Below, in pieces: positions 12,731-35,045 of a stretch of DNA of 38,810 nt (position 1 is the stretch's first letter; every line of letters starts with the position of its first letter). This stretch comes from Scyliorhinus canicula (Eukaryota). The DNA lies in assembly GCF_902713615.1 (NCBI RefSeq), contig NW_024055452.1, forward strand, positions 1-38,810, written 5' to 3'. The notes beneath the pieces were generated by a model. It saw nothing but the letters and a program-made list of their open reading frames with translations, was not told where the DNA came from and searched no databases. The translations under genes and the position numbers were made by a program.

Positions 12731-12858
12731 CTTCACCAGAGTGACTGCAGCGCTGTAGGACATGCTCAGGAAGAACAGGGTGATGAATGTGGAAGCGGTT
12801 GTCCAGATGTTCCCGTTATCATCCTCATTTTCTTCAGTCCAGGTGTGGTCTGTGGTAT
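12731..12858 (-). CDS. IGHM: IgM TM1 exon (DTTDHTWTEENEDDNGNIWTTASTFITLFFLSMSYSAAVTLVK)
   Basis: CGTAG| acceptor and AAG|GTGAGA donor; 128 bp plus 1 nt from CH4 gives 43 codons; acidic spacer and CART-type WTTASTF..LF.LS..YS..VTL motif. Not in the ORF track. Confidence 0.93.
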
Positions 12859-13017
12859 CTACGAGGATCGAGCCAAATATAATTAGTTTGTTTATTAATC
12901 CAGGATATGTTTTTTAATATTCTCGTTTCATTTTCTCCCGCTGCTAATTCATTCTTTAATATATTTGTCATTGCATATCTACTGTTGAGTTCATGACACT
13001 CGGAAATCGATCGCTGT

Positions 13018-13208
13018 AACTTTTTTCTTCCAATTAAGGGGCAATTTAACACGGGCAATCCACCTACCCTGCACATCTTTGGGTTGTCGGCGTGAGACCC
13101 GCAGGTCACTGGGAAAGTCCACTGGGACAGAGACCCAGGAGCGGGATCAACCCCAGGTCCATGGTGGCTGAGGCAGCAGTGCTAACCACTATGCCACCGT
13201 GCTGCCCT
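13018..13208 (-). mobile_element. Older copy of the short tRNA-derived SINE
   Basis: Reverse-complement head GGGCAGCACGGTGGCATAGTGGTTAGC; ends CCCCTTAATTGGAAGAAAAAA. Confidence 0.7.
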
Positions 13209-13636
13209 TGCCTGACGTTTGTGTTTGTTCTTTAGCTTTTGTGTCTGTGTGGATGCGAAATTCGTATTTCTTTACTCTTCTTTTGTGTGTCCCGATGTCT
13301 TTATAAGTGTCATTGTGTGTTCATGTGTCAATGAGTATTGATCTGTGTACCTGTGTGTCAGCGCCTGTGTGAACTTTGTTTATCTTCTGTTAATGTGTAT
13401 TTATGAGTGTTTTATTGTGTGTGTTTGTGTGTTGAAGTCTATGTTTATATATTAATGCCTGTGTTAATATAAGTTTATACTTCCCTGCCCAGTAATAAAA
13501 GTGTTAATGTGTCTTTATACGTTCAACATGCATGTCAATGTCTTAATGTTTGTGTCTGGATAAGTGCGTTTGTGTGTGTGTGAGTTTGTTGATGCGTGTA
13601 TTTCATCATAGAATCATCATTAAATATAATCCCTAT

Positions 13637-13860
13637 GGGCAGCACGGTGGCCTCGTGGTTAGCACAACCGCCTCACGACGCTGAGGTCCCAGGTTCGATC
13701 CCGGCTCTGGGTCACTGTCCGTGTGGAGTTTGCACATTCTCCCCGTGTCTGCGTGGGTTTCGCCCCCACAACCCAAAAATGTGCAGAGTAGGTGGATTGG
13801 CCATGCTAAATTGCCCCTTAATTGGAAAAAAATAATTGGGTAATCTAAATTTAAAAAAAT
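13637..13860 (+). mobile_element. Young short SINE with 13-bp TSD (ATATAATCCCTAT), nested in the tail of an older SINE
   Basis: TSD at 13624-13636 and 13861-13873; A-box and B-box (GGTTCGATCCC) present. Confidence 0.85.
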
Positions 13861-13873
13861 ATATAATCCCTAT

Positions 13874-14170
13874 TGTGCCGAACGAGGCCATTCGGCCCAT
13901 TGTGTCTGCACCGACCCTCCGAAAGAGCACTCTGCCTGGACGCATGCCCCTGCCCTGTCACCAGAACCCCGTAACCCCACCTAACGTTGTGGGCATTAAG
14001 CGGTAATATAGCCTGGCCAACCCACCGAACCCGCACATCTTTGGACTGTGGGAGGAAACTAGAGCACGCGGAGGAAACAGGAACAGACCTGGCAGAACAT
14101 GGGAACACCACACAGACAATCACCCAAGGCTGGAATTGAACCCGGGATTATGGCGCTGTGCGGCAGTGGT
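13874..14170 (-). mobile_element. Older HE1-like SINE with CR1-type tail
   Basis: GAGGCCATTCGGCCCATTGTGTCTGCACCG tail in reverse; its end continues left of the nested SINE (CATAGAATCATC, about 13606-13620). Confidence 0.7.
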
Positions 14171-14368
14171 GCTATTTATGCGTTGATGTTTGATTATAAC
14201 TATCTATTGATGTGTATTGATGACTCTATGTATATTCATATGTGTTCGTGTTAGCGTGTGTACGAGTCAGCTAATATGTATCTACGTGTGTCCGTTAGTG
14301 TGGATTATTGTCTCTGTTTGAATGGAAATATTTCTGTCATCGTGAAATTCTGCTAATTTACATGTTAT

Positions 14369-17300
14369 CCAGCAGAGGGCAGCAGAGCAGAGCTACTGAT
14401 CAGCTGTTCTGGGGGAATTTGCATACGTGCAGTGTGGTCAGCCTAAGTTGAAGGGGAACCGGCAAAGGAGACCCAAGGAGTTTGAGTGAAGACAAGCATC
14501 CAGCAGAGGGCAGCAGAGCAGAGCTACTGATCAGCTGTTCTGGGGGAATTTGCATACGTGCAGTGTGGTCAGCCTAAGTTGAAGGGGAACCGGCGAAGGA
14601 GACCCAAGGAGTTTGAGTGAAGACAAGCATCCAGCAGAGGGCAGCAGAGCAGAGCTACTGATCAGCTGTTCTGGGGGAATTTGCATACGTGCAGTGCGGT
14701 CAGCCTAAGTTGAAGGGGAACCGGCGAAGGAGACCCAAGGAGTTTGAGTGAAGACAAGCATCCAGCAGAGGGCAGCAGAGCAGAGCTACTGATCAGCTGT
14801 TCTGGGGGAATTTGCATACGTGCAGTGCGGTCAGCCTAAGTTGAAGGGGAACCGGCGAAGGAGACCCAAGGAGTTTGAGTGAAGACAAGCATCCAGCAGA
14901 GGGCAGCAGAGCAGAGCTACTGATCAGCTGTTCTGGGGGAATTTGCATACGTGCAGTGTGGTCAGCCTAAGTTGAAGGGGAACCGGCGAAGGAGACCCAA
15001 GGAGTTTGAGTGAAGACAAGCATCCAGCAGAGGGCAGCAGAGCAGAGCTACTGATCAGCTGTTCTGGGGGAATTTGCATACGTGCAGTGTGGTCAGCCTA
15101 AGTTGAAGGGGAACCGGCGAAGGAGACCCAAGGAGTTTGAGTGAAGACAAGCATCCAGCAGAGGGCAGCAGAGCAGAGCTACTGATCAGCTGTTCTGGGG
15201 GAATTTGCATACGTGCAGTGTGGTCAGCCTAGGTTGAAGGGGAACCGGCGAAGGAGACCCAAGGAGTTTGAGTGAAGACAAGCATCCAGCAGAGGGCAGC
15301 AGAGCAGAGCTACTGATCAGCTGTTCTGGGGGAATTTGCATACGTGCAGTGTGGTCAGCCTAAGTTGAAGGGGAACCAGCGAAGGAGACCCAAGGAGTTT
15401 GAGTGAAGACAAGCATCCAGCAGAGGGCAGCAGAGCAGAGCTACTGATCAGCTGTTCTGGGGGAATTTGCATACGTGCAGTGTGGTCAGCCTAAGTTGAA
15501 GGGGAACCGGCGAAGGAGACCCAAGGAGTTTGAGTGAAGACAAGCATCCAGCAGAGGGCAGCAGAGCAGAGCTACTGATCAGCTGTTCTGGGGGAATTTG
15601 CATACGTGCAGTGTGGTCAGCCTAAGTTGAAGGGGAACCGGCGAAGGAGACCCAAGGTGTTTGAGTGAAGACAAGCATCCAGCAGAGGGCAGCAGAGCAG
15701 AGCTACTGATCAGCTGTTCTGGGGGAATTTGCATACGTGCAGTGGGGTCAGCCTAAGTTGAAGGGGAACCGGCGAAGGAGACCCAAGGAGTTTGAGTGAA
15801 GACAAGCATCCAGCAGAGGGCAGCAGAGCAGAGCTACTGATCAGCTGTTCTGGGGGAATTTGCATACGTGCAGTGCGGTCAGCCTAAGTTGAAGGGGAAC
15901 CGGCGAAGGAGACCCAAGGAGTTTGAGTGAAGACAAGCATCCAGCAGAGGGCAGCAGAGCAGAGCTACTGATCAGCTGTTCTGGGGGAATTTGCATACGT
16001 GCAGTGTGGTCAGCCTAAGTTGAAGGGGAACCGGCGAAGGAGACCCAAGGAGTTTGAGTGAAGACAAGCATCCAACAGAGGGCAGCAGAGCAGAGCTACT
16101 GATCAGCTGTTCTGGGGGAATTTGCATACGTGCAGTGGGGTCAGCCTAAGTTGAAGGGGAACCGGCGAAGGAGACCCAAGGAGTTTGAGTGAAGACAAGC
16201 ATCCAGCAGAGGGCAGCAGAGCAGAGCTACTGATCAGCTGTTCTGGGGGAATTTGCATACGTGCAGTGTGGTCAGCCTACGTTGAAGGGGAACCGGCGAA
16301 GGAGACCCAAGGAGTTTGAGTGAAGACAAGCATCCAGCAGAGGGCAGCAGAGCAGAGCTACTGATCAGCTGTTCTGGGGGAATTTGCATACGTGCAGTGC
16401 GGTCAGCCTAAGTTGAAGGGGAACCGGCGAAGGAGACCCAAGGAGTTTGAGTGAAGACAAGCATCCAGCAGAGGGCAGCAGAGCAGAGCTACTGATCAGC
16501 TGTTCTGGGGGAATTTGCATACGTGCAGTGCGGTCAGCCTAAGTTGAAGGGGAACCGGCGAAGGAGACCCAAGGAGTTTGAGTGAAGACAAGCATCCAGC
16601 AGAGGGCAGCAGAGCAGAGCTACTGATCAGCTGTTCTGGGGGAATTTGCATACGTGCAGTGTGGTCAGCCTAAGTTGAAGGGGAACCGGCGAAGGAGACC
16701 CAAGGAGTTTGAGTGAAGACAAGCATCCAGCAGAGGGCAGCAGAGCAGAGCTACTGATCAGCTGTTCTGGGGGAATTTGCATACGTGCAGTGGGGTCAGC
16801 CTAAGTTGAAGGGGAACCGGCGAAGGAGACCCAAGGAGTTTGAGTGAAGACAAGCATCCAGCAGAGGGCAGCAGAGCAGAGCTACTGATCAGCTGTTCTG
16901 GGGGAATTTGCATACGTGCAGTGCGGTCAGCCTAAGTTGAAGGGGAACCGGCGAAGGAGACCCAAGGAGTTTGAGTGAAGACAAGCATCCAGCAGAGGGC
17001 AGCAGAGCAGAGCTACTGATCAGCTGTTCTGGGGGAATTTGCATACGTGCAGTGGGGTCAGCCTAAGTTGAAGGGGAACCGGCGAAGGAGACCCAAGGAG
17101 TTTGAGTGAAGACAAGCATCCAGCAGAGGGCAGCAGAGCAGAGCTACTCATCAGCTGTTCTGGGGGAATTTGCATACGTGCAGTGGGGTCAGCCTACGTT
17201 GAAGGGGAACCGGCGAAGGAGACCCAAGGAGTTTGAGTGAAGACAAGCATCCAGCAGAGGGCAGCAGAGCAGAGCTACTGATCAGCTGTTCTGGGGGAAT

Positions 17301-20300
17301 TTGCATACGTGCAGTGGGGTCAGCCTAAGTTGAAGGGGAACCGGCGAAGGAGACCCAAGGAGTTTGAGTGAAGACAAGCATCCAGCAGAGGGCAGCAGAG
17401 CAGAGCTACTGATCAGCTGTTCTGGGGGAATTTGCATACGTGCAGTGGGGTCAGCCTAAGTTGAAGGGGAACCGGCGAAGGAGACCCAAGGAGTTTGAGT
17501 GAAGACAAGCATCCAGCAGAGGGCAGCAGAGCAGAGCTACTGATCAGCTGTTCTGGGGGAATTTGCATACGTGCAGTGCGGTCAACCTAAGTTGAAGGGG
17601 AACCGGCGAAGGAGACCCAAGGAGTTTGAGTGAAGACAAGCATCCAGCAGAGGGCAGCAGAGCAGAGCTACTGATCAGCTGTTCTGGGGGAATTTGCATA
17701 CGTGCAGTGTGGTCAGCCTAAGTTGAAGGGGAACCGGCGAAGGAGACCCAAGGAGTTTGAGTGAAGACAAGCATCCAACAGAGGGCAGCAGAGCAGAGCT
17801 ACTGATCAGCTGTTCTGGGGGAATTTGCATACGTGCAGTGGGGTCAGCCTAAGTTGAAGGGGAACCGGCGAAGGAGACCCAAGGAGTTTGAGTGAAGACA
17901 AGCATCCAGCAGAGGGCAGCAGAGCAGAGCTACTGATCAGCTGTTCTGGGGGAATTTGCATACGTGCAGTGTGGTCAGCCTACGTTGAAGGGGAACCGGC
18001 GAAGGAGACCCAAGGAGTTTGAGTGAAGACAAGCATCCAGCAGAGGGCAGCAGAGCAGAGCTACTGATCAGCTGTTCTGGGGGAATTTGCATACGTGCAG
18101 TGCGGTCAGCCTAAGTTGAAGGGGAACCGGCGAAGGAGACCCAAGGAGTTTGAGTGAAGACAAGCATCCAGCAGAGGGCAGCAGAGCAGAGCTACTGATC
18201 AGCTGTTCTGGGGGAATTTGCATACGTGCAGTGCGGTCAGCCTAAGTTGAAGGGGAACCGGCGAAGGAGACCCAAGGAGTTTGAGTGAAGACAAGCATCC
18301 AGCAGAGGGCAGCAGAGCAGAGCTACTGATCAGCTGTTCTGGGGGAATTTGTATACGTGCAGTGTGGTCAGCCTAAGTTGAAGGGGAACCGGCGAAGGAG
18401 ACCCAAGGAGTTTGAGTGAAGACAAGCATCCAGCAGAGGGCAGCAGAGCAGAGCTACTGATCAGCTGTTCTGGGGGAATTTGCATACGTGCAGTGCGGTC
18501 AGCCTAAGTTGAACGGGAACCGGCGAAGGAGACCCAAGGAGTTTGAGTGAAGACAAGCATCCAGCAGAGGGCAGCAGAGCAGAGCTACTGATCAGCTGTT
18601 CTGGGGGAATTTGCATACGTGCAGTGTGGTCAGCCTAAGTTGAAGGGGAACCGGCGAAGGAGACCCAAGGAGTTTGAGTGAAGACAAGCATCCAGCAGAG
18701 GGCAGCAGAGCAGAGCTACTGATCAGCTGTTCTGGGGGAATTTGCATACGTGCAGTGGGGTCAGCCTAAGTTGAAGGGGAACCGGCGAAGGAGACCCAAG
18801 GAGTTTGAGTGAAGACAAGCATCCAGCAGAGGGCAGCAGAGCAGAGCTACTGATCAGCTGTTCTGGGGGAATTTGCATACGTGCAGTGCAGTCAGCCTAA
18901 GTTGAAGGGGAACCGGCGAAGGAGACCCAAGGAGTTTGAGTGAAGACAAGCATCCAGCAGAGGGCAGCAGAGCAGAGCTACTGATCAGCTGTTCTGGGGG
19001 AATTTGCATACGTGCAGTGGGGTCAGCCTAAGTTGAAGGGGAACCGGCGAAGGAGACCCAAGGAGTTTGAGTGAAGACAAGCATCCAGCAGAGGGCAGCA
19101 GAGCAGAGCTACTGATCAGTTGTTCTGGGGGAATTTGCATACGTGCAGTGGGGTCAGCCTACGTTGAAGGGGAACCGGCGAAGGAGACCCAAGGAGTTTG
19201 AGTGAAGACAAGCATCCAGCAGAGGGCAGCAGAGCAGAGCTACTGATCAGCTGTTCTGGGGGAATTTGCATACGTGCAGTGGGGTCAGCCTAAGTTGAAG
19301 GGGAACCGGCGAAGGAGACCCAAGGAGTTTGAGTGAAGACAAGCATCCAGCAGAGGGCAGCAGAGCAGAGCTACTGATCAGCTGTTCTGGGGGAATTTGC
19401 ATACGTGCAGTGGGGTCAGCCTACGTTGAAGGGGAACCGGCGAAGGAGACCCAAGGAGTTTGAGTGAAGACAAGCATCCAGCAGAGGGCAGCAGAGCAGA
19501 GCTACTGATCAGCTGTTCTGGGGGAATTTGCATACGTGCAGTGGGGTCAGCCTACGTTGAAGGGGAACCGGCGAAGGAGACCCAAGGAGTTTGATTGAAG
19601 ACAAGCATCCAGCAGAGGGCAGCAGAGCAGAGCTACTGATCAGCTGTTCTGGGGGAATTTGCATACGTGCAGTGGGGTCAGCCTAAGTTGAAGGGGAACC
19701 GGCGAAGGAGACCCAAGGAGTTTGAGTGAAGACAAGCATCCAGCAGAGGGCAGCAGAGCAGAGCTACTGATCAGCTGTTCTGGGGGAATTTGCATACGTG
19801 CAGTGGGGTCAGCCTAAGTTGAAGGGGAACCGGCGAAGGAGACCCAAGGAGTTTGAGTGAAGACAAGCATCCAGCAGAGGGCAGCAGAGCAGAGCTACTG
19901 ATCAGCTGTTCTGGGGGAATTTGCATACGTGCAGTGGGGTCAGCCTACGTTGAAGGGGAACCGGCGAAGGAGACCCAAGGAGTTTGAGTGAAGACAAGCA
20001 TCCAGCAGAGGGCAGCAGAGCAGAGCTACTGATCAGCTGTTCTGGGGGAATTTGCATACGTGCAGTGGGGTCAGCCTAAGTTGAAGGGGAACCGGCGAAG
20101 GAGACCCAAGGAGTTTGAGTGAAGACAAGCATCCAGCAGAGGGCAGCAGAGCAGAGCTACTGATCAGCTGTTCTGGGGGAATTTGCATACGTGCAGTGGG
20201 GTCAGCCTACGTTGAAGGGGAACCGGCGAAGGAGACCCAAGGAGTTTGAGTGAAGACAAGCATCCAGCAGAGGGCAGCAGAGCAGAGCTACTGATCAGCT

Positions 20301-22052
20301 GTTCTGGGGGAATTTGCATACGTGCAGTGGGGTCAGCCTACGTTGAAGGGGAACCGGCGAAGGAGACCCAAGGAGTTTGATTGAAGACAAGCATCCAGCA
20401 GAGGGCAGCAGAGCAGAGCTACTGATCAGCTGTTCTGGGGGAATTTGCATACGTGCAGTGGGGTCAGCCTAAGTTGAAGGGGAACCGGCGAAGGAGACCC
20501 AAGGAGTTTGAGTGAAGACAAGCATCCAGCAGAGGGCAGCAGAGCAGAGCTACTGATCAGCTGTTCTGGGGGAATTTGCATACGTGCAGTGGGGTCAGCC
20601 TAAGTTGAAGGGGAACCGGCGAAGGAGACCCAAGGAGTTTGAGTGAAGACAAGCATCCAGCAGAGGGCAGCAGAGCAGAGCTACTGATCAGCTGTTCTGG
20701 GGGAATTTGCATACGTGCAGTGGGGTCAGCCTACGTTGAAGGGGAACCGGCGAAGGAGACCCAAGGAGTTTGAGTGAAGACAAGCATCCAGCAGAGGGCA
20801 GCAGAGCAGAGCTACTGATCAGCTGTTCTGGGGGAATTTGCATACGTGCAGTGGGGTCAGCCTAAGTTGAAGGGGAACCGGCGAAGGAGACCCAAGGAGT
20901 TTGAGTGAAGACAAGCATCCAGCAGAGGGCAGCAGAGCAGAGCTACTGATCAGCTGTTCTGGGGGAATTTGCATACGTGCAGTGGGGTCAGCCTACGTTG
21001 AAGGGGAACCGGCGAAGGAGACCCAAGGAGTTTGAGTGAAGACAAGCATCCAGCAGAGGGCAGCAGAGCAGAGCTACTGATCAGCTGTTCTGGGGGAATT
21101 TGCATACGTGCAGTGGGGTCAGCCTACGTTGAAGGGGAACCGGCGAAGGAGACCCAAGGAGTTTGAGTGAAGACAAGCATCCAGCAGAGGGCAGCAGAGC
21201 AGAGCTACTGATCAGCTGTTCTGGGGGAATTTGCATACGTGCAGTGGGGTCAGCCTACGTTGAAGGGGAACCGGCGAAGGAGACCCAAGGAGTTTGAGTG
21301 AAGACAAGCATCCAGCAGAGGGCAGCAGAGCAGAGCTACTGATCAGCTGTTCTGGGGGAATTTGCATACGTGCAGTGGGGTCAGCCTACGTTGAAGGGGA
21401 ACCGGCGAAGGAGACCCAAGGAGTTTGAGTGAAGACAAGCATCCAGCAGAGGGCAGCAGAGCAGAGCTACTGATCAGCTGTTCTGGGGGAATTTGCATAC
21501 GTGCAGTGGGGTCAGCCTACGTTGAAGGGGAACCGGCGAAGGAGACCCAAGGAGTTTGAGTGAAGACAAGCATCCAGCAGAGGGCAGCAGAGCAGAGCTA
21601 CTGATCAGCTGTTCTGGGGGAATTTGCATACGTGCAGTGGGGTCAGCCTACGTTGAAGGGGAACCGGCGAAGGAGACCCAAGGAGTTTGAGTGAAGACAA
21701 GCATCCAGCAGAGGGCAGCAGAGCAGAGCTACTGATCAGCTGTTCTGGGGGAATTTGCATACGTGCAGTGGGGTCAGCCTACGTTGAAGGGGAACCGGCG
21801 AAGGAGACCCAAGGAGTTTGTGTGAAGACAAGCATCCAGCAGAGGGCAGCAGAGCAGAGCTACTGATCAGCTGTTCTGGGGGAATTTGCATACGTGCAGT
21901 GGGGTCAGCCTACGTTGAAGGGGAACCGGCGAAGGAGACCCAAGGAGTTTGAGTGAAGACAAGCATCCAGCAGAGGGCAGCAGAGCAGAGCTACTGATCA
22001 GCTGTTCTGGGGGAATTTACATACGTGCAGTGCGGTCAGCCTAAGTTGAAGG
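14369..22052 (+). repeat. 131-bp tandem array, 58 full units plus one 86-bp partial unit, forming the 5' end of the CR1 insertion
   Basis: Unit CCAGCAGAGGGCAGCAGAGCAGAGCTACTGATCAGCTGTTCTGGGGGAATTTGCATACGTGCAGTG(T/C/G)GGTCAGCCTA(A/C)GTTGAAGGGGAACCGGCGAAGGAGACCCAAGGAGTTTGAGTGAAGACAAGCAT; first and last starts are 7598 = 58 x 131 apart, so no net indel. Confidence 0.97.
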
Positions 22053-22305
22053 TGGTTTGTGGAGGGGCTGTTGGCAAGTGACAGTTAAACCCGAAACACT
22101 TCGTGAGTGTTTCCCACCCTACCTCCTCCTCTAACCAACCCCCCCCCCCACCCCACGGTGGTTGGGAAGCGGGAGCAGGGGCCTGTCGTGAAGGTGAGTG
22201 AGTGCCTTTAAATTTGCTTAACTTTCAGCGGGAGCAGGGTTTGAGGTAATATCAGGAAAGCTCTTCCTTTCTTTTTCTTTTTCTTGTTTTTATAATCTAG
22301 AGGTG

Positions 22306-23244
22306 ATGTCAGGGAAGGCAGTACAATGCTCCTCCTGCAGAATGTTTGAGGTGAGGGATGCCGTCAGTGTCCCTGCTGATTTCATCTGTGGGAAGTGCAC
22401 CCAACTCCAGCTCCTCAAAAACCGTGTTAGGGACCTGGAGCTTGAGCTGGATGAACTTCGGATCATTCGGGAGGCAGAGGGGGTCATAGATAGGAGCTTC
22501 AGGGAAGTAGTTACACCAAAGACTGGAGATAGATGGGTAACTGTAAGAGGGACTGGGAAGAAGCAGTCAGTGCAGGGATCCCCTGCGGTCGTTCCCCTGA
22601 GTAACAAGTATACCGTTTTGGATACTTGTGGGGGGGGGGGGACTTACCAGGGGTAAGCCATGGGGTACGGGCCTCTGGCACGGAGTCTGTCCCTGTTGCT
22701 CAGAAGGGAAGGGGGGAAAGGAGTAGAACATTAATAATTGGGGACTCAATAGTCAGGGGCACAGATAGGAGATTTTGTGGGAGCGAGAGAGACTCACGTT
22801 TGGTATGTTGCCTCTCAGGTGCAAGGGTAAGTGATGTCTCGGATCGTGTTTTCCGGGTCCTTAAGGGGGAGGGGGAGCAGCCCCAAGTCGTAGTCCACAT
22901 TGGCACTAACGACATAGGTAGGAAAGGGGACAAGGATGTCAGGCAGGCCTTTAGGGAGCTAGGATGGAAGCTCAGAGCGAGAACAAACAGTGTTGTTATC
23001 TCTGGGTTGTTGCCCGTGCCACGTGATGGTGAGATGAGGAATAGGGAGAGAGAGCAATTAAACACGTGGCTACAGGGATGGTGCAGGCGGGAGGGATTCA
23101 GATTTCTGGATAACTGGGGCTCTTTCTGGGGAAGGTGGGACCTCTATAGACAGGATGGTCTACATCTGAACCTGAGGGGCACCAATATCCTGGGGGGGGG
23201 GGGGGGGGGAGATTTGTTAGTGCTCTTTGGGGGGTTTAAACTAA
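22306..23244 (+). CDS. CR1 ORF1p (CxxC..CxxC zinc finger, leucine zipper, SGNH esterase), broken by two G-run frameshifts in this sequence
   Basis: QCSSC..ICGKC..LKNRVRDLELEL; GDS (IIGDSIV), GxND (HIGTND) and DxxH (DGLH); G12 at 22630-22641 and G18 at 23192-23209; expected end ..RFVSALWGGLN* at 23244. Confidence 0.8.
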
Positions 23245-23300
23245 TTCAGCAGGGGCATGGGAACCTGGATTGTAGTTTTGGGGTACGGGAGATTGAGAGT

Positions 23301-26129
23301 ATGGAGGTCAGGAGCACAGATTTGACTTCGCAGGAGGGTGCCAGTGTTCAGGTAGGTGGTTTGAAGTGTGTCTACTTCAATGCCAGGAGTATACGAAATA
23401 AGGTAGGGGAACTGGCAGCATGGGTTGGTACCTGGGACTTCGACGTCGTGGCCATTTCAGAGACATGGATAGAGCAGGGACAGGAATGGTTGTTGCAGGT
23501 TCCGGGGTTTAGGTGTTTTAGTAAGCTCAGAGAAGGGGGCAAAAGAGGGGGAAGTGTGGCGCTGCTAGTCAAGGACAGTATTACGGTGGCGGAAAGGATG
23601 CTAGATGGGGACTCTTCTTCTGAGGTAGTATGGGCTGAGCTTAGAAACAGGAAAGGAGAGGTCACCCTGTTGGGAGTTTTCTATAGGCCACCTAATAGTT
23701 CTAGGGATGTAGAGGAAAGGATGGCGAAGATGATTCTGGAAAAGAGCGAAAGTAACAGGGTAGTTGTTATGGGAGACTTTAACTTTCCAAATATTGACTG
23801 GAAAAGATATAGTTCGAGTACATTAGATGGGTCGTTCTTTGTACAATGTGTGCAGGAGGGTTTCCTGACACAATATGTTGACAGGCCAACAAGAGGCGAG
23901 GCCACATTGGATTTGGTTTTGGGTAATGAACCACGCCAGGTGTTAGATCTGGAGGTAGGTGAGCACTTTGGAAACAGTGACCACAATTCGGTGACCTTTA
24001 CGTTAGTGATGGAAAGGGATAAGTATACCCCGCAGGGCAAGAGTTATAGCTGGGGGAAGGGCAATTATGATGCCATTAGACATGACTTAGGATGTGTTGG
24101 TTGGAGAAGTAGGCTGCAAGGGTTGGGCACACTGGATATGTGGAGCTTGTTCAAGGAACAGCTATTGCATGTTCGTGATAAGTACGTACCAGTCAGGCAG
24201 GGAGGAAGGGGTCGAGCGAGGGAACCGTGGTTTACCAAAGAAGTGGAATCTCTTGTTAAGAGGAAGAAGGAGGCCTCTGTGAAGATGAGGCATGAAGTTT
24301 CAGTTGGGGCGCTTGATAGTTACAAGGAAGCGAGTAAGGATCTAAAGAGAGAGCTGAGACGAGCAAGGAGGAGCCATGAGAAGTCTTTGGCAGGTAGGAT
24401 CAAGGAAAACCCAAAAGCTTTCTATAGGTATGTCAGGAATAAAAGAATGACTAGGGTAAGAGTAGGGCCAGTCAAGGACAGTGGTGGGAAGTTGTGTGTG
24501 GAGGCTGAGGAGATAAGCGAGATACTAAATGAATACTTTTTGTCAGTATTCACTCAAGAAAAAGATAATATTGTGGAGGAGAATGCTGAGACCCAGGCTA
24601 TTAGAATAGATGGCATTGAGGTGCGTAGGGAAGAAGTGTTGGCAATTCTGGACAAGGTGAAAATAGATAAGTCCCCGGGGCCGGATGGGATTTATCCTAG
24701 GATTCTCTGGGAAGCCAGGGAAGAGATTGCTGAGCCTTTGGCTTTGATTTTTAGGTCATCATTGGCTACAGGAATAGTGCCAGAGGACTGGAGGATAGCA
24801 AATGTGGTCCCTTTGTTCAAGAAGGGGAGTAGAGATAACCCCGGTAACTATAGGCCGGTGAGCCTAACGTCTGTGGTGGGTAAGGTCTTGGAGAGGATTA
24901 TAAAAGATACGATTTATAATCATCTAGATAGGAATAATATGATTAGGGATAGTCAGCATGGTTTTGTGAAGGGTAAGTCATGCCTCACAAACCTTATCGA
25001 GTTCTTTGAGAAGGTGACTGATCAGGTAGACGAGGGTAGAGCAGTTGATGTGGTGTATATGGATTTCAGTAAAGCGTTTGATAAGGTTCCCCATGGTCGG
25101 CTATTGCAGAAAATACGGAGGCTGGGGATTGAGGGTGATTTAGAGATGTGGATCAGAAATTGGCTAGTTGAAAGAAGACAGAGAGTGGTAGTTGATGGGA
25201 AATGTTCAGAATGGAGTTCAGTTACGAGTGGCGTACCACAAGGATCTGTTCTGGGGCCGTTGCTGTTTGTCATTTTTATAAATGACCTAGAGGAGGGCGC
25301 AGAAGGATGGGTGAGTAAATTTGCAGACGACACTAAAGTTGGTGGAGTTGTAGACAGTGCGGAAGGATGTGGCAGGTTACAGAGGGACATAGATAAGCTG
25401 CAGAGCTGGGCTGAGAGGTGGCAAATGGAGTTTAATGTGGATAAGTGTGAGGTGATTCACTTTGGAAAGAATAACAGGAATGCGGAATATTTGGCTAATG
25501 GTAAAATTCTTGGTAGTGTGGATGAGCAGAGGGATCTCGGTGTCCATGTACATAGATCCCTGAAAGTTGCCACCCAGGTTGATAGGGTAGTGAAGAAGGC
25601 CTATGGTGTGTTGGCCTTTATTGGTAGAGGGATTGAGTTCCGGAGCCATGAGGTCATGTTGCAGTTGTACAAAACTCTAGTACGGCCGCATTTGGAGTAT
25701 TGCGTACAGTTCTGGTCGCCTCATTATAGGAAGGACGTGGAAGCTTTAGAACGGGTGCAGAGGAGATTTACCAGGATGTTGCCTGGTATGGAGGGAAAAT
25801 CTTATGAGGAAAGGCTGATGGACTTGAGGTTGTTTTCGTTAGAGAGAAGAAGGTTAAGAGGTGACTTAATAGAGGCATACAAAATGATCAGAGGGTCAGA
25901 TAGGGTGGACAGCGAGAGCCTTCTCCCGCGGATGGAGGTGGCTAGCACGAGGGGACATAGCCTTAAATTGAGGGGTAATAGATATAGGACAGAGGTCAGA
26001 GGTGGGTTTTTTACGCAAAGAGTGGTGAGGCCGTGGAATGCCCTAACTGCAACAGTAGTGAACTCGCCAACATTGAGGGCATTAAAAAATTTATTGGATA
26101 AGCATATGGATGATAAGGGCATAGTGTAG
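23301..26129 (+). CDS. CR1 ORF2p (APE endonuclease plus reverse transcriptase), about 942 aa from the ATG at 23301, uninterrupted
   Basis: APE motifs NARS, SETW, GVFYRPP, MGDFN, SDH; RT motifs PGPDG, YRPVSLTS, QHGF, DFSKAFD, GVPQGSVLGP, FADD. The true start codon is inferred. Confidence 0.93.
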   Translation: MEVRSTDLTSQEGASVQVGGLKCVYFNARSIRNKVGELAAWVGTWDFDVVAISETWIEQGQEWLLQVPGFRCFSKLREGGKRGGSVALLVKDSITVAERMLDGDSSSEVVWAELRNRKGEVTLLGVFYRPPNSSRDVEERMAKMILEKSESNRVVVMGDFNFPNIDWKRYSSSTLDGSFFVQCVQEGFLTQYVDRPTRGEATLDLVLGNEPRQVLDLEVGEHFGNSDHNSVTFTLVMERDKYTPQGKSYSWGKGNYDAIRHDLGCVGWRSRLQGLGTLDMWSLFKEQLLHVRDKYVPVRQGGRGRAREPWFTKEVESLVKRKKEASVKMRHEVSVGALDSYKEASKDLKRELRRARRSHEKSLAGRIKENPKAFYRYVRNKRMTRVRVGPVKDSGGKLCVEAEEISEILNEYFLSVFTQEKDNIVEENAETQAIRIDGIEVRREEVLAILDKVKIDKSPGPDGIYPRILWEAREEIAEPLALIFRSSLATGIVPEDWRIANVVPLFKKGSRDNPGNYRPVSLTSVVGKVLERIIKDTIYNHLDRNNMIRDSQHGFVKGKSCLTNLIEFFEKVTDQVDEGRAVDVVYMDFSKAFDKVPHGRLLQKIRRLGIEGDLEMWIRNWLVERRQRVVVDGKCSEWSSVTSGVPQGSVLGPLLFVIFINDLEEGAEGWVSKFADDTKVGGVVDSAEGCGRLQRDIDKLQSWAERWQMEFNVDKCEVIHFGKNNRNAEYLANGKILGSVDEQRDLGVHVHRSLKVATQVDRVVKKAYGVLAFIGRGIEFRSHEVMLQLYKTLVRPHLEYCVQFWSPHYRKDVEALERVQRRFTRMLPGMEGKSYEERLMDLRLFSLERRRLRGDLIEAYKMIRGSDRVDSESLLPRMEVASTRGHSLKLRGNRYRTEVRGGFFTQRVVRPWNALTATVVNSPTLRALKNLLDKHMDDKGIV

Positions 26130-26228
26130 GTTAGATGGCCTTTAGTTTTTTTTCCATGTCGGTGCAACATTGAGGGCCGAAGGGCCTGTACTGCGCTGTA
26201 TCGTTCTATGTTCTATGTTCTATGTTAT

Positions 26229-26590
26229 TGGTTACATTTGTGTTTCATATTCTTCAGTCAGTCTGCTTGTCTGGTTGTATATGTCTGTATACATGCATGT
26301 ACCCACTTGTGTGTGTGGAATTGTGTTTGTATGTGTGGATGCGCACGTGAGTCTGTGTGTTTCTAAACATGTGCTTTTTGTGTTTATGTGCATGCTTGTG
26401 AATTTTTGTGCACATTTGCGTGTGTTTTTGTGTCAAAATATGTGTGGTCCGTTGTGCCTGGGTGTATGTTTGTGCATGTGTTTCTATGTGTGTGTCCATG
26501 TGTGTGTTTGTGTCTACGTGCGAGCGTGTGTGTGTTTCTGGGTCTGTGTGCATGTGTAGTGTCTGTGTCTGTTTATCTGTCTGTGTATTT
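26229..26590. repeat. TG-rich low-complexity intron sequence (counterparts at about 13220-13600 and 14175-14365)
   Basis: Degenerate (TG)n and TGTA/TGTC runs on both sides of the LINE insertion. Confidence 0.7.
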
Positions 26591-26734
26591 GTATCAGCTG
26601 CCTGTAGCTTTGCCAGTTGTGGGTATTATTGATACCGATGTAGAATTGGTGGAGGTGGAGATACAGAGAGTTCACTCATCACCTTCCTCCTCTTGTGGTT
26701 GGGAAAGTGGAGGTAAAATGGGTTAGTATTGCCC

Positions 26735-27345
26735 CTTTGCTCTCTTTGTTGGGGAAGTGGGGAGGCAGTGCATTAAATAATGTCCTTCCACTCATTGTTG
26801 GAAGCGGGTGTCCAGTGGATTAACTCAGCCCCCCACTGTCTCTTTGTTGGGGAAGTGGGGGGGTACAGTGTGTTAAGTAATGCCCCAACCCCTCTCTTTG
26901 TTGGGGACGTGGGGAGACAATGGATTAACTAATGCCCCTCTCTTTGTTGGTGAAGTGGGGCTACAGTGGATTAACTAAATCCCCTCCCACTCTTTCTGTT
27001 GGTGAAGTGGGGGTACAGTAGATTAACTAAAGCCCCTCCCACTCTCTCTGTTGGGGAAGTGGGGGTACAGTGAATTAACTAAAGACCCTCCCCCTCCCTC
27101 TATTGGGGAAGTGGGGGTACAGTGGATTAACTAATGCCCCTCCCCTCTCTGTTGGGGAAGTGGGGGTACAGTGGATTAACTAATGCCCCTCCTCCTCTCT
27201 CTGTTGGGGAAGTGGGGATACAGTGGTTAACTAATGCCCTTCCCCATCTCTCTGTGGGGGAGGTGGGTGGGTGGGGAGACAGTGGAATAACTAATACCCC
27301 TCCCACTCTCTCTGTTGGGGAGGTAGGGGTACAGTAGATTAACAA
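26735..27345. repeat. About 49-bp G-rich minisatellite, about 12 diverged copies
   Basis: Unit approximately TGTTGGGGAAGTGGGGGTACAGTGGATTAACTAATGCCCCTCCCCTCTC; AGTGGATTAA recurs at 27121 and 27170. Confidence 0.88.
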
Positions 27346-27758
27346 TTTCACTTTCCCCTCTCTTTGACGGGGGATTGTTGGTCCATGTTTCTGTGTGACC
27401 CTCAATTCAGTTCCCAGTGGGTGTGATGCAGCAACTTAAAGCTGACATTAATTTTAAAGGGATGGACAATGAGAGCAGCAGGAACACCGAGATTTAAATG
27501 TGATGGGTTTGTTTGCCTGAAATGATTTCTCCTCAGTGGGAGGAAAGTCAATGAAGATATTTTGCTGAATCCTGGAATGAATGAGTTTTACTCTGTCTCT
27601 AACCCAGGGTGTATCTGAGCTGGGAGCTCTGGTTGTATCAGACTTGGGGCCGAGACCTGTAGAAACCCGGGTCTCATTGAACAGATCTAATATCAGCAAA
27701 GTGGAAGCACCATTAATTATGCGGCTGTGTATTTAAATCACAATTGGAGGAAAAAACC

Positions 27759-27774
27759 TTTATTATTTTTTATT
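27759..27774 (-). terminator. Secretory IgM poly(A) signals (two AATAAA)
   Basis: TTTATT at 27759-27764 and 27769-27774, 28-43 nt past the secretory stop. Confidence 0.75.
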
Positions 27775-27801
27775 TTAGTTGGAAATATAACAAATAGATT
27801 C

Positions 27802-28193
27802 TCATTGACATGAATTAACGGTGTCCATCAGAGCGAGGGAAATGTTCACAAAACTGGGTTTACCGCTGGATTTATCAACCGTTCTGTTGATGATCTTCAA
27901 GGGGATGGCTTCATGTCCCACCACACAGGAGTAAGAAGCGCCGCTAGCCCACTCCTCCGCTGCAATGGATAACAGGCTGTACATGAAGAAGGAGCTATTG
28001 CCGGTCTTCGCCATCACCTCGGTGTTCTTGTAGTTCCCGGGATTCACCGGCTTGTCATTGACGGTCCACTTGACGAAGATCTCTCGGGGGGAGAAACCTC
28101 TCACTAAGCAGCTGAGGGAGACGAATCTCTGAGCGGAGACGTCTTCCGCCGAGGGCAGGAGGACAGAGACGGACGGTTCCCGCGGATTGGGAT
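27802..28193 (-). CDS. IGHM: IgM CH4 exon plus secretory tailpiece; internal donor at 27864/27863 for the membrane form
   Basis: TCTGCAG| acceptor; [43 protein letters not shown]...[25 protein letters not shown]|GTAAAC; tail [20 protein letters not shown] with N-glycan site and penultimate Cys. Confidence 0.96.
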
Positions 28194-28489
28194 CTGCAGA
28201 AAATGTACAATAAATGTCAATAAAATGGGGAATTCCGGAGACAATGGAACCGCGGGTTAGATGTGAGAGAAATGTGTTTTGTGTTGGATTTTAAAGGTTT
28301 CCATTTTCCACTTTGGGATCTGTCCGGTTTCCCAGCTCGGAGCAGAGGTGGACACAATCCTTTTCCCTGAGAATTTACGGATATTGGATTCGAAAGTTTC
28401 AGAAAATGTACAGCAGGGAAACAGGCCATTCGGCCCAACTCTTCTGTGCTGGTGTATAAACTCCACATCAAACTCCCCCTACCTCAAGA

Positions 28490-29992: not shown

Positions 29993-30064
29993 AAATACTG
30001 ACCGCTGCACTGACACCAGAAATAGACACAATGACTCACTTATTGCTTCAGTCTCACCGCTCAC

Positions 30065-30373
30065 CTATTTTTTTGTGTATTGAAATTCTTAAAGGAGTTG
30101 GCAGGTCCTGATGGCTCGCCACACAGTCAAACACAGCCCCACTCAGCCAGGCTTGTGTCGAGATGTTTAATTTGCTGACCACGCTCTCAGTATCTGCCCC
30201 AGGCTGGTCGGCAATCTGTGATTTCAGCGGCTTCTTCGCTTCACTCCAGGACACGTTGACTCCATAAGGAGCATTCGAAATGATGCAGGTTAAGGTTACA
30301 GTTACCTCCAGTAAGACCTGTTCTATTGGTGGTGGCAGTATTGTTCCTGAGGCTACAGTGCAAACGGAAGGAT
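30065..30373 (-). CDS. IGHM: IgM CH3 exon
   Basis: TTCACAG| acceptor and G|GTGAGC donor; 309 bp, phase 1; [43 protein letters not shown]...[22 protein letters not shown]. Confidence 0.95.
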
Positions 30374-30995
30374 CTGTGAATGAAAAAAGTGGAAATCAAC
30401 CCAAGTTTCATCTTCAGAATCAGGACAGCAGGATTCAGCCTTCACTCACTCAATGGGAATGAATCAACTTCGAGACTTCTAATGATCGCCATTAATCTTC
30501 TATACACGTTTGGTCAGTGTAAACTCTTCTCATTATGAAATACAGTCAGCCCCAATGCCATTCTAACGAATCAGTATTGCAGCATTCCCAATACAAATAC
30601 TCAAGTGCTGATCTCAGGAACGAAGTACTGAGGGCTTATTTATAAATAGATTGGATTGAACTTTCCAACACTTTCGTCCCGGAGCTGTTATCAGTAAAGT
30701 GTTTCAGACACCCACTGACTCTTAAATATACGCAGCGGTCTCAGGATAAAGCTGATATCAAGGCCACCTCACTCACTAAATGACTTCAAATTAGAGCGAA
30801 ACATGAATTTATATACTGATCAAATCCTGAATGGTGAGCAATCCTAATGCAGCTTTTCCATCAGAATGAAACACAAACTACATGGCAGTAAATTAGAAGT
30901 TATTCTGTGCTTTGTACTAACTTCAGTAAATTCCTGATTTGGATTAACATCAGAATGCAGGATGATTCATTCTTTCCTCTGTTTGTGTCTCTTAC

Positions 30996-31304
30996 CAGAC
31001 GCGGTGATGTTGTAACTTTGGGTGACCTCTTGATGAGTGACCTGGCAGGTATAGACCGCTCTGCTGAACCATTCCCCAGCGGAGAGTGTCAGCCGACTGC
31101 TCGCTGAGAAGTTCCCGTTCACTTCACAGGCGGGAGAGGTGACAATTCCTGACCCCATGGGTTGTCCATTCTTCAGCCACTTCACCGTGATTGAATTTGG
31201 CTGGAAATCGTTAATTGAACAGACGATGGTTGCAAATTTCTGTCTTGTGATTTCTTCACTGGAACTCACGGTGAGGAGAACATTTGGAGCATAAATTCTG
31301 GGAC
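30996..31304 (-). CDS. IGHM: IgM CH2 exon
   Basis: TTCTTGAAG| acceptor and G|GTAAGA donor; 309 bp; [47 protein letters not shown]...[19 protein letters not shown]. Confidence 0.95.
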
Positions 31305-31509
31305 CTTCAAGAAACACAATTAGATATTTCTTGCAGAAGAAATTGATGAAAAAAATGAGTTCATATGCTTTAAAACATGTTTGTGGTCAATAGACACAAA
31401 GCTTGATTTTCCAGGGAAGAAATATGCAGAGTATTAAAATTAGTTATATCCAAGACCCTATACAAGATAATCATAGGTTTCTGATTCTCACAGATTCCAC
31501 AACACTTAC

Positions 31510-31809
31510 ATGTCATTCCAATGCTCTTGGCTGAGCCGCTGTGTCGAACCGCACAGCTGATTTTGCTGCATGCCCCCTCTGACTCGGTGATGGTTAACTG
31601 GCTGCTCAGGGTGTAGGTTCCCTTCTTGTTTCTCACTGACGGGTATTTCTTAACTCCAGTGGCGATCAGCTGCCCATCTTTCTTCCAGGTAAGGCTGGTG
31701 ATTTCTGGGGAGTAGTCCATCGCCAAACAGCCGAAGGTCACGGAGCCGTCGGTGTTGTGTTGCTGGCAGGAGGAAACCAGGCTGTAGAGAGTGGGCGGAG
31801 ACGGTGTCG
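31510..31809 (-). CDS. IGHM: IgM CH1 exon
   Basis: TTCTCTCCCAG| acceptor and T|GTAAGT donor; 300 bp; [44 protein letters not shown]...[17 protein letters not shown]. Confidence 0.95.
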
Positions 31810-32164
31810 CTGGGAGAGAATGGCCCATTCAACAGGTTAGACTCTGGGATTGTATTTATTCAGTAACCAAACATTTCAAAATTTGACGAGAACTATGTGT
31901 TTATTCCAACATTTTCCTAACAAATGTTACATCCACATTTCAGCTTCTATTAGTTCTACCATTTGAGAACCAACACCTGTTTGCCCCTCATTAGAAACTC
32001 ACATCTTTCTCCGTCTCTATCACATAAAAACAACATGTTGATGTAATCTGAATGATGTAATTTGCATTGGATTGAAAGCGAAAGCGAAGAGCGGATGATT
32101 TTCCCCATTATGTCAGCCATCATGGAAAACAAAATGTAATGTCCCATAGACCCGGAGTCTGCTC

Positions 32165-34964: not shown

Positions 34965-35045
34965 TAACCTCAGCCGGTGCAGCAATTGAACCCGCGCTGC
35001 TGGGATTGATCTTCATCACGAACCAGCCGCCCAGCTGACTGTGCC

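What the first reader, a model, noticed from the sequence alone, without database searches (positions are those of the whole stretch)
14369..22052. About 57 perfect Ig octamers plus E-boxes and kB-like sites arrayed inside an IgM intron: a candidate retrotransposon-built B-cell enhancer
Seen: each 131-bp unit contains CAGCTG (E-box) followed by GGGGGAATTTGCAT. That is a perfect octamer ATTTGCAT overlapping GGGAATTTGC (1 mismatch to the kB site GGGAATTTCC) and a GGGAA Ikaros-type core. I found only 2 of 59 copies with a broken octamer (about 18350, and the last, LINE-proximal copy, ATTTACAT). Established: octamer (Oct1/Oct2/OBF1) plus E2A sites form the core of the mammalian E-mu and catfish E-mu-3' IgH enhancers. 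From memory, horn-shark VH promoters lack the octamer. Inference: a LINE promoter monomer amplified into a 7.7-kb Oct/E2A array within an IgH cluster could act as a strong enhancer. Among the many shark IgM clusters it could bias which one is activated, rearranged or mutated. Alternatively the octamer only serves the LINE's own germline or embryo (Pou5-type) expression.
Basis: partly seen in the sequence, partly recalled or inferred. Interest (0 to 1): 0.9.

Follow-up and report, generated by a model that had tools for sequence, protein, structure and literature searches.

The report
LINE promoter-monomer array in IgM intron
The 7.7-kb run of 59 near-identical 131-bp units, each with a perfect octamer and an E-box, is real, but it is the repeated 5' end of a CR1-type jumping gene lying backwards in an intron of a shark IgM gene; the same units occur thousands of times elsewhere in the genome, so a B-cell enhancer role is possible but unsupported.

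Summary
The array spans 14367-22052: 58 full units and one 88-bp unit of 131 bp, 99.2% identical, with no indels. It carries 57 exact GGGGGAATTTGCAT and 58 CAGCTG.

The array runs directly into a full-length CR1-group LINE on the + strand. The LINE has a zinc-finger/leucine-zipper plus esterase ORF1, an endonuclease, a reverse transcriptase and a (TTCTATG)n tail. The whole 11.9-kb element lies antisense in the 15.0-kb CH4-to-TM1 intron (12859-27863) of a minus-strand IgM gene.

Public DNA runs of the same species show the monomer at roughly 10^3-10^4 copies. That is about 4-7 per LINE copy that keeps its 5'UTR. Variant monomers and a second copy of the monomer/5'UTR junction come from other loci. 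So the octamer belongs to the LINE family, not to this IgM cluster.

This array is an outlier in length and grew at least partly by duplication of a 6-monomer block. It is not a CpG island, and its private mutations are enriched for CpG decay. The kB-like site fails the consensus, and no PU.1, IRF or MEF2 sites are present.

Enhancer function is untested and unlikely (about 7%). The closest analogue is the mouse L1 monomer promoter. The scan had already noted such monomers on other DNA of this genome (s1-246718).

The parts
14367..22052 (+). Array of 58 full and one 88-bp 131-bp monomers. Each has CAGCTG at unit positions 35-40 and GGGGGAATTTGCAT at 45-58. Position 69 is hypervariable (G/T/C) in the 5' half, and position 80 alternates A/C in the 3' half. 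Monomers 37-42 and 43-48 form a duplicated 6-monomer block.
22053..22302 (+). Non-repeated part of the LINE 5'UTR (a 'tether') between the last, truncated monomer and ORF1.
   Evidence: An RNA-run contig spans 22026-22193 with a 4-bp deletion, so it comes from another copy with the same junction.
22303..22656 (+). N-terminal part of LINE ORF1 (CxxC...CxxC zinc finger plus leucine-zipper-like stretch). In this copy the frame breaks at a run of 12 G (22630-22641), which is 2 bases longer than in the other copies seen in reads.
   Evidence: '22630 left out 2' in 513/513 and 1129.7/1129.7 of contig word depth, X1 and X15.
22626..26129 (+). 1167-aa open frame with a GDSL/SGNH esterase (aa 38-185), an APE-type endonuclease (250-453) and a reverse transcriptase (734-956).
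26130..26228 (+). LINE 3'UTR ending in (TTCTATG)3 with no poly(A). ATGTTAT occurs at both ends of the insertion (14361 and 26222), as a possible short target duplication or microhomology.
27802..28194 (-). IgM CH4 exon with the secretory tailpiece ([20 protein letters not shown]). The internal G|GTAAA donor for TM splicing is at 27864/27863, and AATAAA signals lie at about 27770.
12731..12858 (-). IgM TM1 exon (...NIWTTASTFITLFFLSMSYSAAVTLVK). The CH4-to-TM1 intron is therefore 12859-27863 (15,005 bp), and the LINE plus array (11,862 bp) makes up 79% of it.
30054..31828 (-). IgM CH1 (within 31370-31828), CH2 (30967-31317) and CH3 (about 30057-30380) exons, all C1-set domains with open frames.

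Best explanation
The array is the tandem-monomer 5' end of a young CR1-group LINE, that is, the element's own upstream or internal promoter region. The LINE inserted antisense into the CH4-to-TM1 intron of an IgM cluster. The octamer and E-box are built into the family's monomer. They most likely serve LINE transcription through ubiquitous or germline/embryonic POU factors and bHLH factors; this step is inferred. Typical family members carry a handful of monomers. This copy was expanded to 59, at least partly by DNA-level duplication of multi-monomer blocks (unequal exchange). It is most likely CpG-methylated and silent in somatic cells, like other LINEs. Its main effect on the IgM gene is probably structural. 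It enlarges an intron of about 3 kb to 15 kb between the secretory poly(A) site and TM1, and it points an antisense promoter towards the C exons. It is probably not a dedicated B-cell enhancer.
For: Shown here:
(1) The array runs without a gap into a LINE 5'UTR, ORF1 and an esterase-EN-RT frame on the same strand, ending in (TTCTATG)n.
(2) In two DNA runs of the same species, summed word depth is 177,000/365,000 on the monomer. It is 25,000/84,000 on the adjacent 5'UTR, and single flank contigs have about 36-100. That means thousands of monomers genome-wide and about 4-7 per 5'UTR-bearing copy.
(3) Contigs that continue past 22054 into variant monomers (AACTGGCGAATGAG...) match no unit of this array. 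The junction contig with a 4-bp deletion also comes from another locus.
(4) At 22019 over 99.9% of the depth in species A (X25, X28) and all of it in species D (X37) reads G, which restores the octamer.
(5) Monomers 37-42 and 43-48 share the pattern C-A-C-C(+120T)-A-A, which shows block duplication.
(6) CpG observed/expected is 0.38, equal to the window background. Three of 12 private substitutions are CpG>CpA, p about 0.015.
(7) In poly(A) RNA raw reads the monomer:5'UTR depth ratio is 0.5-0.56, against 4-7 in DNA. The 5'UTR shows a 3-4-fold strand bias that the monomers lack. This fits monomers lying mostly upstream of the transcription start.
From the literature: mouse L1 promoters are monomer arrays averaging about 3 units, with a maximum of 50 (PMC7778262). 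An ORF1 of zinc finger/leucine zipper plus esterase defines a vertebrate CR1 subgroup (PMC4120745). LINEs are hypermethylated in elephant shark (PMC5437953).
Against: No direct evidence places a transcription start in the monomers or shows promoter activity. In the two Logan-contig runs labelled 'RNA?' or '?' (X1, X15) the monomer:5'UTR ratio is DNA-like (8.1 and 4.7), so the under-representation in RNA is seen only in the two oligo-dT runs. Summed contig depths are only rough copy numbers. Methylation is inferred from mutation pattern and from another species, not measured. The monomer is not a CpG island, unlike mouse L1 monomers. Nothing here excludes that this copy is open in B cells because it sits in a very highly transcribed gene.
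Confidence: 0.8

Rival explanations
1. Exapted B-cell enhancer. In B cells Oct2/OBF-1-type and E2A-type factors load on the 57 octamers and 58 E-boxes. The array then acts as a strong cluster-specific enhancer, or as a hypermutation-targeting element, for this IgM cluster.
For: The motif content is real. Octamer plus E-protein sites are the functional core of the catfish Emu3' enhancer, and a trimer of octamers drives an Oct2-responsive reporter (PMC1800861). Shark IgH genes are reported to lack the upstream octamer, so an octamer array would be a new input (PMC2435157). The 'broken' last octamer ATTTACAT is the reverse complement of ATGtAAAT, the variant that binds Oct factors in the catfish enhancer. 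E-boxes contribute to hypermutation targeting by Ig enhancers (PMC3972084).
Against: The same monomer occurs thousands of times elsewhere at LINE 5' ends, so nothing is Ig-specific. There are no PU.1/Ets-IRF, MEF2 or consensus NF-kB sites. In the hypermutation-targeting assay an octamer mutation in the human IgH intron enhancer had little effect. The array shows CpG-decay mutations and background CpG content. LINEs are hypermethylated in a cartilaginous fish. The octamer also serves ubiquitous genes such as H2B and snRNA genes. No read at 95% identity or better lay on this cluster's secretory 3' end in three RNA runs. That test was weak, covering only about 100 bp at the edge of the stretch.
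Confidence: 0.07
2. The monomers are a 5'UTR repeat that turned into a satellite-like array with no promoter role. The tandem units are simply an unstable piece of LINE sequence that expands by unequal exchange, and the octamer is a passenger.
For: Block duplication inside the array. The unit is not a CpG island. There is no direct start-site evidence. The literature search turned up reviews of TE-to-tandem-repeat conversion, for example PMC6947457, seen as a title and abstract only.
Against: The unit sits at the 5' end of hundreds or more copies of an otherwise 5'-truncation-prone family and is homogeneous across them. The octamer position is intact in over 99.9% of the depth, as expected if monomer-bearing masters are the ones that propagate. 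The poly(A) RNA ratio suggests the monomers lie upstream of most starts.
Confidence: 0.1
3. The length is an assembly artefact. The array exists, but the figure of 59 copies (and the 2-base excess in the G12 run of ORF1) is a mis-assembly or homopolymer error.
For: Short-read contigs cannot span a 7.7-kb array of 99% identical units. The best DNA runs hold only 0.45-0.48 of the flank words, so they are not the assembled individual. All other copies read 2 bases fewer at 22630.
Against: The array has an ordered, non-random variant structure: a gradient at position 69, the A/C pattern at position 80, and a 6-monomer block with a shared private 120T. This is expected of real sequence read through by long reads, not of a collapsed or inflated repeat.
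Confidence: 0.07

Closest known systems
Monomeric promoters of mouse and rat L1 (A, Tf and Gf monomers plus tether)
   Same: Head-to-tail units are followed by a non-repeated tether and ORF1 on the same strand. Unit number varies between copies, with a small typical number and rare very long arrays: the mouse averages about 3 and reaches 50 (PMC7778262; PMC5381506). Here the estimate is about 4-7 on average, and this copy has 59.
   Different: The LINE clade differs: CR1 group with an esterase ORF1 and a microsatellite tail, not L1 with poly(A). The unit is 131 bp, not about 200 bp. It is not a CpG island (observed/expected 0.38). Its motifs are a POU octamer plus CAGCTG, not YY1. Promoter activity is not shown here.
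Catfish Emu3' and mammalian Emu IgH enhancers
   Same: They combine octamer and E-protein sites, and they lie in or next to the Cmu transcription unit.
   Different: Those enhancers are single-copy, a few hundred bp long, and combine several further sites (muA/muB Ets-PU.1, IRF, YY1). They were defined by function. This array is one 2-motif unit repeated 59 times, derives from a dispersed repeat, lies between CH4 and TM1, and has no functional data.
CR1-H 5'UTR promoter driving the LL2R tandem array in chicken oocytes (bioRxiv 10.64898/2026.03.19.712899)
   Same: The 5'UTR of a full-length CR1-group LINE acts as a demethylated, germline-active promoter next to a tandem array.
   Different: In chicken the repeat is a separate 446-bp satellite 13 kb downstream of the LINE and is transcribed from it. 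Here the repeat is the LINE's own 5' end and lies upstream of its ORFs.

Membership tests
CR1-group LINE (subgroup with zinc-finger/leucine-zipper plus esterase ORF1) | APE-type endonuclease followed by reverse transcriptase in ORF2 | tested here: met
   Pfam Exo_endo_phos 1.4e-18 and RVT_1 1.7e-35 in 22626-26129
CR1-group LINE (subgroup with zinc-finger/leucine-zipper plus esterase ORF1) | Type IV ORF1: esterase (SGNH/GDSL) domain, optionally preceded by a zinc finger/leucine zipper | tested here: met
   Lipase_GDSL_2 5e-14. A CxxC...CxxC motif plus a leucine-rich heptad stretch is read from 22303-22656. The family definition is taken from PMC4120745.
CR1-group LINE (subgroup with zinc-finger/leucine-zipper plus esterase ORF1) | 3' end with a short microsatellite, not poly(A), preceded by a hairpin | tested here: inconclusive
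   (TTCTATG)3 at the 3' end is clear. A small GGGCC/GGCCU hairpin is predicted, but the fold is no better than shuffles (z = -0.22).
CR1-group LINE (subgroup with zinc-finger/leucine-zipper plus esterase ORF1) | RT groups with CR1 rather than L2, Rex1 or Zenon in a phylogeny | not tested
   No tree was built. The esterase ORF1 also occurs in one L2 subgroup, so 'CR1 group' is safe but 'canonical CR1' is provisional.
Monomer-type LINE promoter (as in rodent L1) | Tandem units directly 5' of a unique tether and ORF1, on the same strand | tested here: met
Monomer-type LINE promoter (as in rodent L1) | The units are a feature of the family: present at the 5' ends of many copies | tested here: met
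   Monomer depth is 177,000/365,000 and junction depth 25,000/84,000, against about 36-100 for flank contigs. Variant monomers and a junction contig with a 4-bp deletion come from other loci. Depths are rough.
Monomer-type LINE promoter (as in rodent L1) | Monomers initiate or drive transcription | not testable with these tools
   Only indirect: the poly(A) RNA monomer:5'UTR ratio is 0.5-0.56 against 4-7 in DNA.
Monomer-type LINE promoter (as in rodent L1) | Monomers form a CpG island | tested here: not met
   3 CpG per 131 bp, observed/expected 0.38, equal to the window background of 0.40
Ig heavy-chain transcriptional enhancer | Octamer plus E-protein binding motifs | tested here: met
   57 ATTTGCAT and 58 CAGCTG
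Ig heavy-chain transcriptional enhancer | Further lymphoid sites (Ets/PU.1-IRF, MEF2, NF-kB) | tested here: not met
   The motif scan of the circular consensus finds only the octamer, one E-box, GGGAA/GGAA cores and ACGTG. GGGAATTTGC fails GGGRNWYYCC.
Ig heavy-chain transcriptional enhancer | Sequence specific to, and conserved at, Ig loci | tested here: not met
   The unit is a dispersed repeat with thousands of copies.
Ig heavy-chain transcriptional enhancer | B-cell-specific open chromatin and enhancer activity | not testable with these tools
   No chromatin or methylation data were available. RNA laying was uninformative for this cluster.

The most novel reading that the evidence does not exclude
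Because it sits inside one of the most heavily transcribed genes of B and plasma cells, this hyper-expanded octamer/E-box array escapes LINE silencing there. It then acts either as an Oct2/E2A-driven enhancer or as an antisense promoter firing towards CH4-CH1. That would give this one IgM cluster a distinct expression level, secreted/membrane ratio or hypermutation load compared with clusters lacking the array.
Probability: 0.07. Interest if true: 0.75.

Novelty: new variant of a known kind. Interest (0 to 1): 0.3.

Why it matters
For immunology the result is mainly a caution. The octamer array in this IgM cluster is a retrotransposon's own 5' end, not evidence for a shark IgH enhancer, and cis-regulation of shark IgH clusters remains an open question.

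For mobile-element biology it is a modest positive. A CR1-group LINE in an elasmobranch has independently taken on the mouse-L1-like architecture of tandem promoter monomers, built around a POU octamer and an E-box rather than a YY1-bearing CpG island. CR1-group elements make up 22-34% of elasmobranch genomes (PMC13343379). That 2026 survey of the group contains no occurrence of 'tandem', 'monomer', 'promoter' or '5 UTR'.

The insertion also enlarges the CH4-TM1 intron about five-fold. This gives a natural test case for how the distance between the poly(A) site and the splice acceptor affects secreted versus membrane IgM.

Tried and rejected
(1) Rfam scan of the whole window at gathering thresholds found nothing, so there is no known RNA family in the array or flanks.

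(2) The NF-kB reading was rejected. GGGAATTTGC does not fit GGGRNWYYCC, and no GGGAATTTCC exists in the window.

(3) I tried to use RNA runs to see whether this cluster is expressed. In X1, X21 and X22 nothing at 95% identity or better lay on 27650-27849, the secretory 3' end. X15's contig there differs at 3 bases and 2 indels, so it is a paralogue or allele. This is inconclusive, because only about 100 bp of exon and 3'UTR were inside the stretch.

(4) I looked for an empty insertion site or insertion polymorphism in other individuals and species. Flank contigs in X1, X15, X25 and X28 all stop at 26272, 44 bp short of the LINE end, and carry 3-4 differences. They may come from paralogous clusters, so no conclusion is possible.

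(5) The CR1 3' hairpin fold is not better than shuffles.

(6) A coding reading of the array was rejected. No ORF of 100 aa or more lies in it, and 131 is not a multiple of 3.

(7) A switch-region or R-loop reading was considered and dropped. The G-rich strand of the array is the template strand for IgM transcription, so IgM transcripts through it are C-rich.

(8) Both calls allowed for finding runs and both for laying reads were used, so the left junction (14367) was never laid.
Full report
OBSERVATION

Tandem Repeats Finder reports a single array at 14367-22052 with period 131, 58.7 copies, 99% matches and no indels. Cutting it in register gives 58 full units and a final 88-bp unit. There are 59 differences from the consensus in 7598 positions, which is 99.2% identity.

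Exact searches give 57 ATTTGCAT, each inside GGGGGAATTTGCAT. All are on the + strand and 131 bp apart, apart from one 262-bp gap. The array also holds 58 CAGCTG.
- Monomer 31 has 56C>T, at about 18352.
- The last unit has ATTTACAT at 22013-22020.

The rest of the window holds two octamers in 31 kb, about what chance gives. The 57 copies are one sequence amplified, though, not 57 independent occurrences.

The 'kB-like' site GGGAATTTGC fails the consensus GGGRNWYYCC. A scan of the circularised consensus finds only the octamer, one E-box, two GGGAA/GGAA cores and an ACGTG. It finds no PU.1, IRF, MEF2, YY1, SP1, AP-1, EBF, RUNX or SOX sites.

CONTEXT

The last unit is cut at its position 88 and runs straight into 250 bp of unique sequence. 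After that come:
- An ORF beginning at 22303, with a CxxC...CxxC motif and a leucine-rich coiled stretch.
- A 1167-aa frame at 22626-26129 carrying a GDSL-type esterase, an APE endonuclease and a reverse transcriptase.
- A tail of (TTCTATG)3 ending at about 26228, without poly(A).

A zinc finger/leucine zipper plus esterase is the 'type IVB' ORF1 reported for one vertebrate CR1 subgroup (PMC4120745). The esterase type also exists in one L2 subgroup and I built no RT tree, so 'CR1 group' is the safe label.

ATGTTAT occurs at both ends of the 11,862-bp element.

In this copy the first ORF stops at a run of 12 G (22630-22641). Every other copy seen in reads is 2 bases shorter there. This copy is therefore either frameshifted in ORF1 or carries a homopolymer error.

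A second, 5'-truncated CR1-type element at 32322-34871 is only 60% identical in its RT and has no monomers.

The IgM gene is on the minus strand:
- Four C1-set exons lie at 31.8-27.8 kb.
- CH4 ends in a mu-type tailpiece, [20 protein letters not shown]. It has the internal G|GTAAA donor at 27864/27863, and AATAAA follows just after the stop.
- TM1 (...NIWTTASTFITLFFLSMSYSAAVTLVK) is at about 12731-12858.

The CH4-to-TM1 intron is thus 12859-27863, or 15,005 bp. The LINE with its array fills 79% of it and lies antisense to IgM. This agrees with two earlier notes on the same stretch (s1-253613 and s1-253701), and I re-derived both here.

IS THE MONOMER A FAMILY FEATURE OR SPECIFIC TO THIS LOCUS?

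I laid public runs on 21850-27849. This stretch holds the last 1.55 monomers, the whole LINE and 1.6 kb of unique intron.

In two DNA runs of the same species:

| Region | Summed word depth (X25 / X28) |
|---|---|
| Monomer | 177,000 / 365,000 |
| Adjacent 5'UTR | 25,000 / 84,000 |
| ORF1 region | 85,000-195,000 |
| LINE 3' end | 0.8-1.1 million |
| Single contigs of flanking intron | about 36-100 |

These sums are rough, but the order of magnitude is clear. There are thousands of monomers genome-wide, hundreds or more LINE copies that keep the monomer/5'UTR junction, and about 4-7 monomers per such copy. This array holds at most a few percent of the genome's monomers.

Three details show directly that other loci carry these units:
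- Contigs that run past 22054 continue into a monomer variant (AACTGGCGAATGAG...) that no unit of this array has.
- A contig spanning the junction (22026-22193) has a 4-bp deletion relative to this copy.
- At 22019, where this copy's last unit has the A of ATTTACAT, over 99.9% of the depth in the two same-species runs and all of it in a run of a different species label reads G.

An earlier, unchecked note (s1-246718) describes an 868-bp stretch of octamer-bearing monomers on a CR1 LINE elsewhere in this genome. That fits the estimate of a few monomers per element.

HOW THE ARRAY GREW AND WHAT STATE IT IS IN

Variants are ordered along the array. Position 69 alternates T/C/G in the 5' half and is G throughout the 3' half (apart from the truncated last unit, which has C), while position 80 alternates A/C in the 3' half. 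Monomers 37-42 and 43-48 share the pattern C, A, C, C+120T, A, A. At least part of the growth was therefore duplication of a 6-monomer (786-bp) block, a DNA-level process typical of unequal exchange.

The array has 3 CpG per unit and an observed/expected ratio of 0.38, the same as the window as a whole (0.40). It is not a CpG island.

Of 12 private substitution types outside positions 69 and 80, three are CpG>CpA, although CpG positions make up under 5% of the unit (binomial p about 0.015). This points to germline methylation since the expansion. [quoted passage not shown] That sets the prior, but it is another species and another tissue.

RNA

In two oligo-dT raw-read runs the LINE body is covered on both strands, with depth rising towards the 3' end. 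This is the usual picture of truncated copies embedded in other transcripts.

The monomer is covered at about half the depth of the adjacent 5'UTR: 1.6 against 3.3 in one run and 13.6 against 24.4 in the other. In DNA the monomer is 4-7 times more abundant than the 5'UTR. The 5'UTR also shows a 3-4-fold strand bias that the monomers lack. This fits starts near the last monomers, with most monomers untranscribed.

The two contig-only runs (X1, X15) show a DNA-like ratio instead, so the point is suggestive only. No run gave usable evidence on whether this IgM cluster is expressed.

INTERPRETATION

The best-supported reading is that the array is the monomeric 5' promoter region of a young CR1-group LINE, hyper-expanded in this copy. 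The octamer and E-box are then the LINE's own regulatory motifs (confidence 0.8).

The closest analogue is the rodent L1 promoter. That promoter consists of monomers plus a tether, averaging about 3 monomers in young mouse families, with 99% of promoters at 10 or fewer and a longest array of 50 (PMC7778262; PMC5381506).

This element works like the rodent promoter but is not a member of the same family. The clade, unit length, motif content and CpG status all differ.

A recent survey of CR1-group elements reports that they make up 22-34% of elasmobranch genomes. It contains no occurrence of 'tandem', 'monomer', 'promoter' or '5 UTR' (PMC13343379). Within what I could read, the architecture therefore looks undescribed for this group.

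THE ENHANCER HYPOTHESIS

Its premises check out:
- Shark IgH genes are said to lack the upstream octamer (PMC2435157).
- The catfish Emu3' core is two variant octamers plus muE5, and it responds to Oct2 (PMC1800861).
- ATTTACAT, the 'broken' last copy, is the reverse complement of the catfish variant ATGtAAAT, which does bind Oct factors.

Several points count against a dedicated role:
- The motif block is a dispersed repeat.
- The other lymphoid sites are missing.
- The octamer also serves ubiquitous genes.
- In the hypermutation-targeting assay an octamer mutation in the human intron enhancer had little effect (PMC3972084).
- The mutation pattern suggests methylation.

I put the hypothesis at about 7%. 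The proposed plasmid reporter tests would probably be positive whatever the native state, so chromatin and methylation assays anchored on unique flanks are the decisive ones.

Two effects on the IgM gene are more likely, and both are inferences. The first is a shift towards secreted mRNA, because the secretory poly(A) site now lies 15 kb rather than about 3 kb ahead of TM1. The second, if the LINE promoter is ever active in B cells, is antisense transcription converging on the C exons.

LIMITS

- The unit count rests on the assembly.
- Depth sums are not true copy numbers.
- The best DNA runs hold only 0.45-0.48 of the flank words, so they are not the assembled individual, and some 'flank' contigs may come from paralogous clusters.
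- The species was not identified.

Noticed in passing
window 22630-22641: A run of 12 G in LINE ORF1 is 2 bases longer than in every other copy seen in reads. It splits the zinc-finger/leucine-zipper part from the esterase part. This is either a real frameshift in this copy or a homopolymer assembly error. A second G-run at about 23228 varies by one G among genomic copies.
   Followed up: partly
window 6312-7130 (-): An open frame of 272 aa holds 9 tandem C2H2 zinc fingers (zf-C2H2 3.2e-61). It is the source of the 84-bp periodicity at 6356-7053, and lies downstream of the IgM TM exon on the same strand.
   Followed up: partly
window 36455-38810 (to the window end): A 40-bp repeat (GTGAGTGAGTAACTGAGTGAGGGTAGGAGAGTGAGTGTGG) of about 59 copies at 87% identity, with GC skew up to +0.85. 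It lies upstream of CH1 in gene orientation, in the presumed J-Cmu intron, and the G-rich strand is the IgM template strand.
   Followed up: no
window 35031-35506: A 29-bp minisatellite of 16.4 copies (CCAGCTAACTGAGCTGTGTACGTCACAAT), rich in AGCT and CAGCTG, between the second LINE and the 40-bp array. The scan already noted it (s1-253677).
   Followed up: no
window 32322-34871 (+): A second, 5'-truncated CR1-type LINE (part of the endonuclease plus RT, 60% aa identity to the first), antisense in the intron upstream of CH1.
   Followed up: partly
window 26698-27343: A 52/101-bp tandem repeat (12.6 copies at 76%) in the CH4-TM1 intron, just 3' of the LINE insertion. DNA depth there is several-fold above the neighbouring intron (763-1424 against about 100-200), so it is a multi-copy repeat.
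   Followed up: no
window about 12990-13110, 13720-13850, 13850-14120 and 29840-30085: Several copies, on both strands, of a short interspersed repeat that translates to ...WVSPPQPK(D/N)VQ.RWIGHAKLPLNWKK.... It is SINE-like, and Rfam gives no hit.
   Followed up: no
window 26272: Flank contigs from four runs (RNA and DNA) all end or diverge at 26272, 44 bp from the LINE's 3' end, and carry 3-4 differences. Other individuals or paralogous clusters may differ in structure right at the insertion site.
   Followed up: partly
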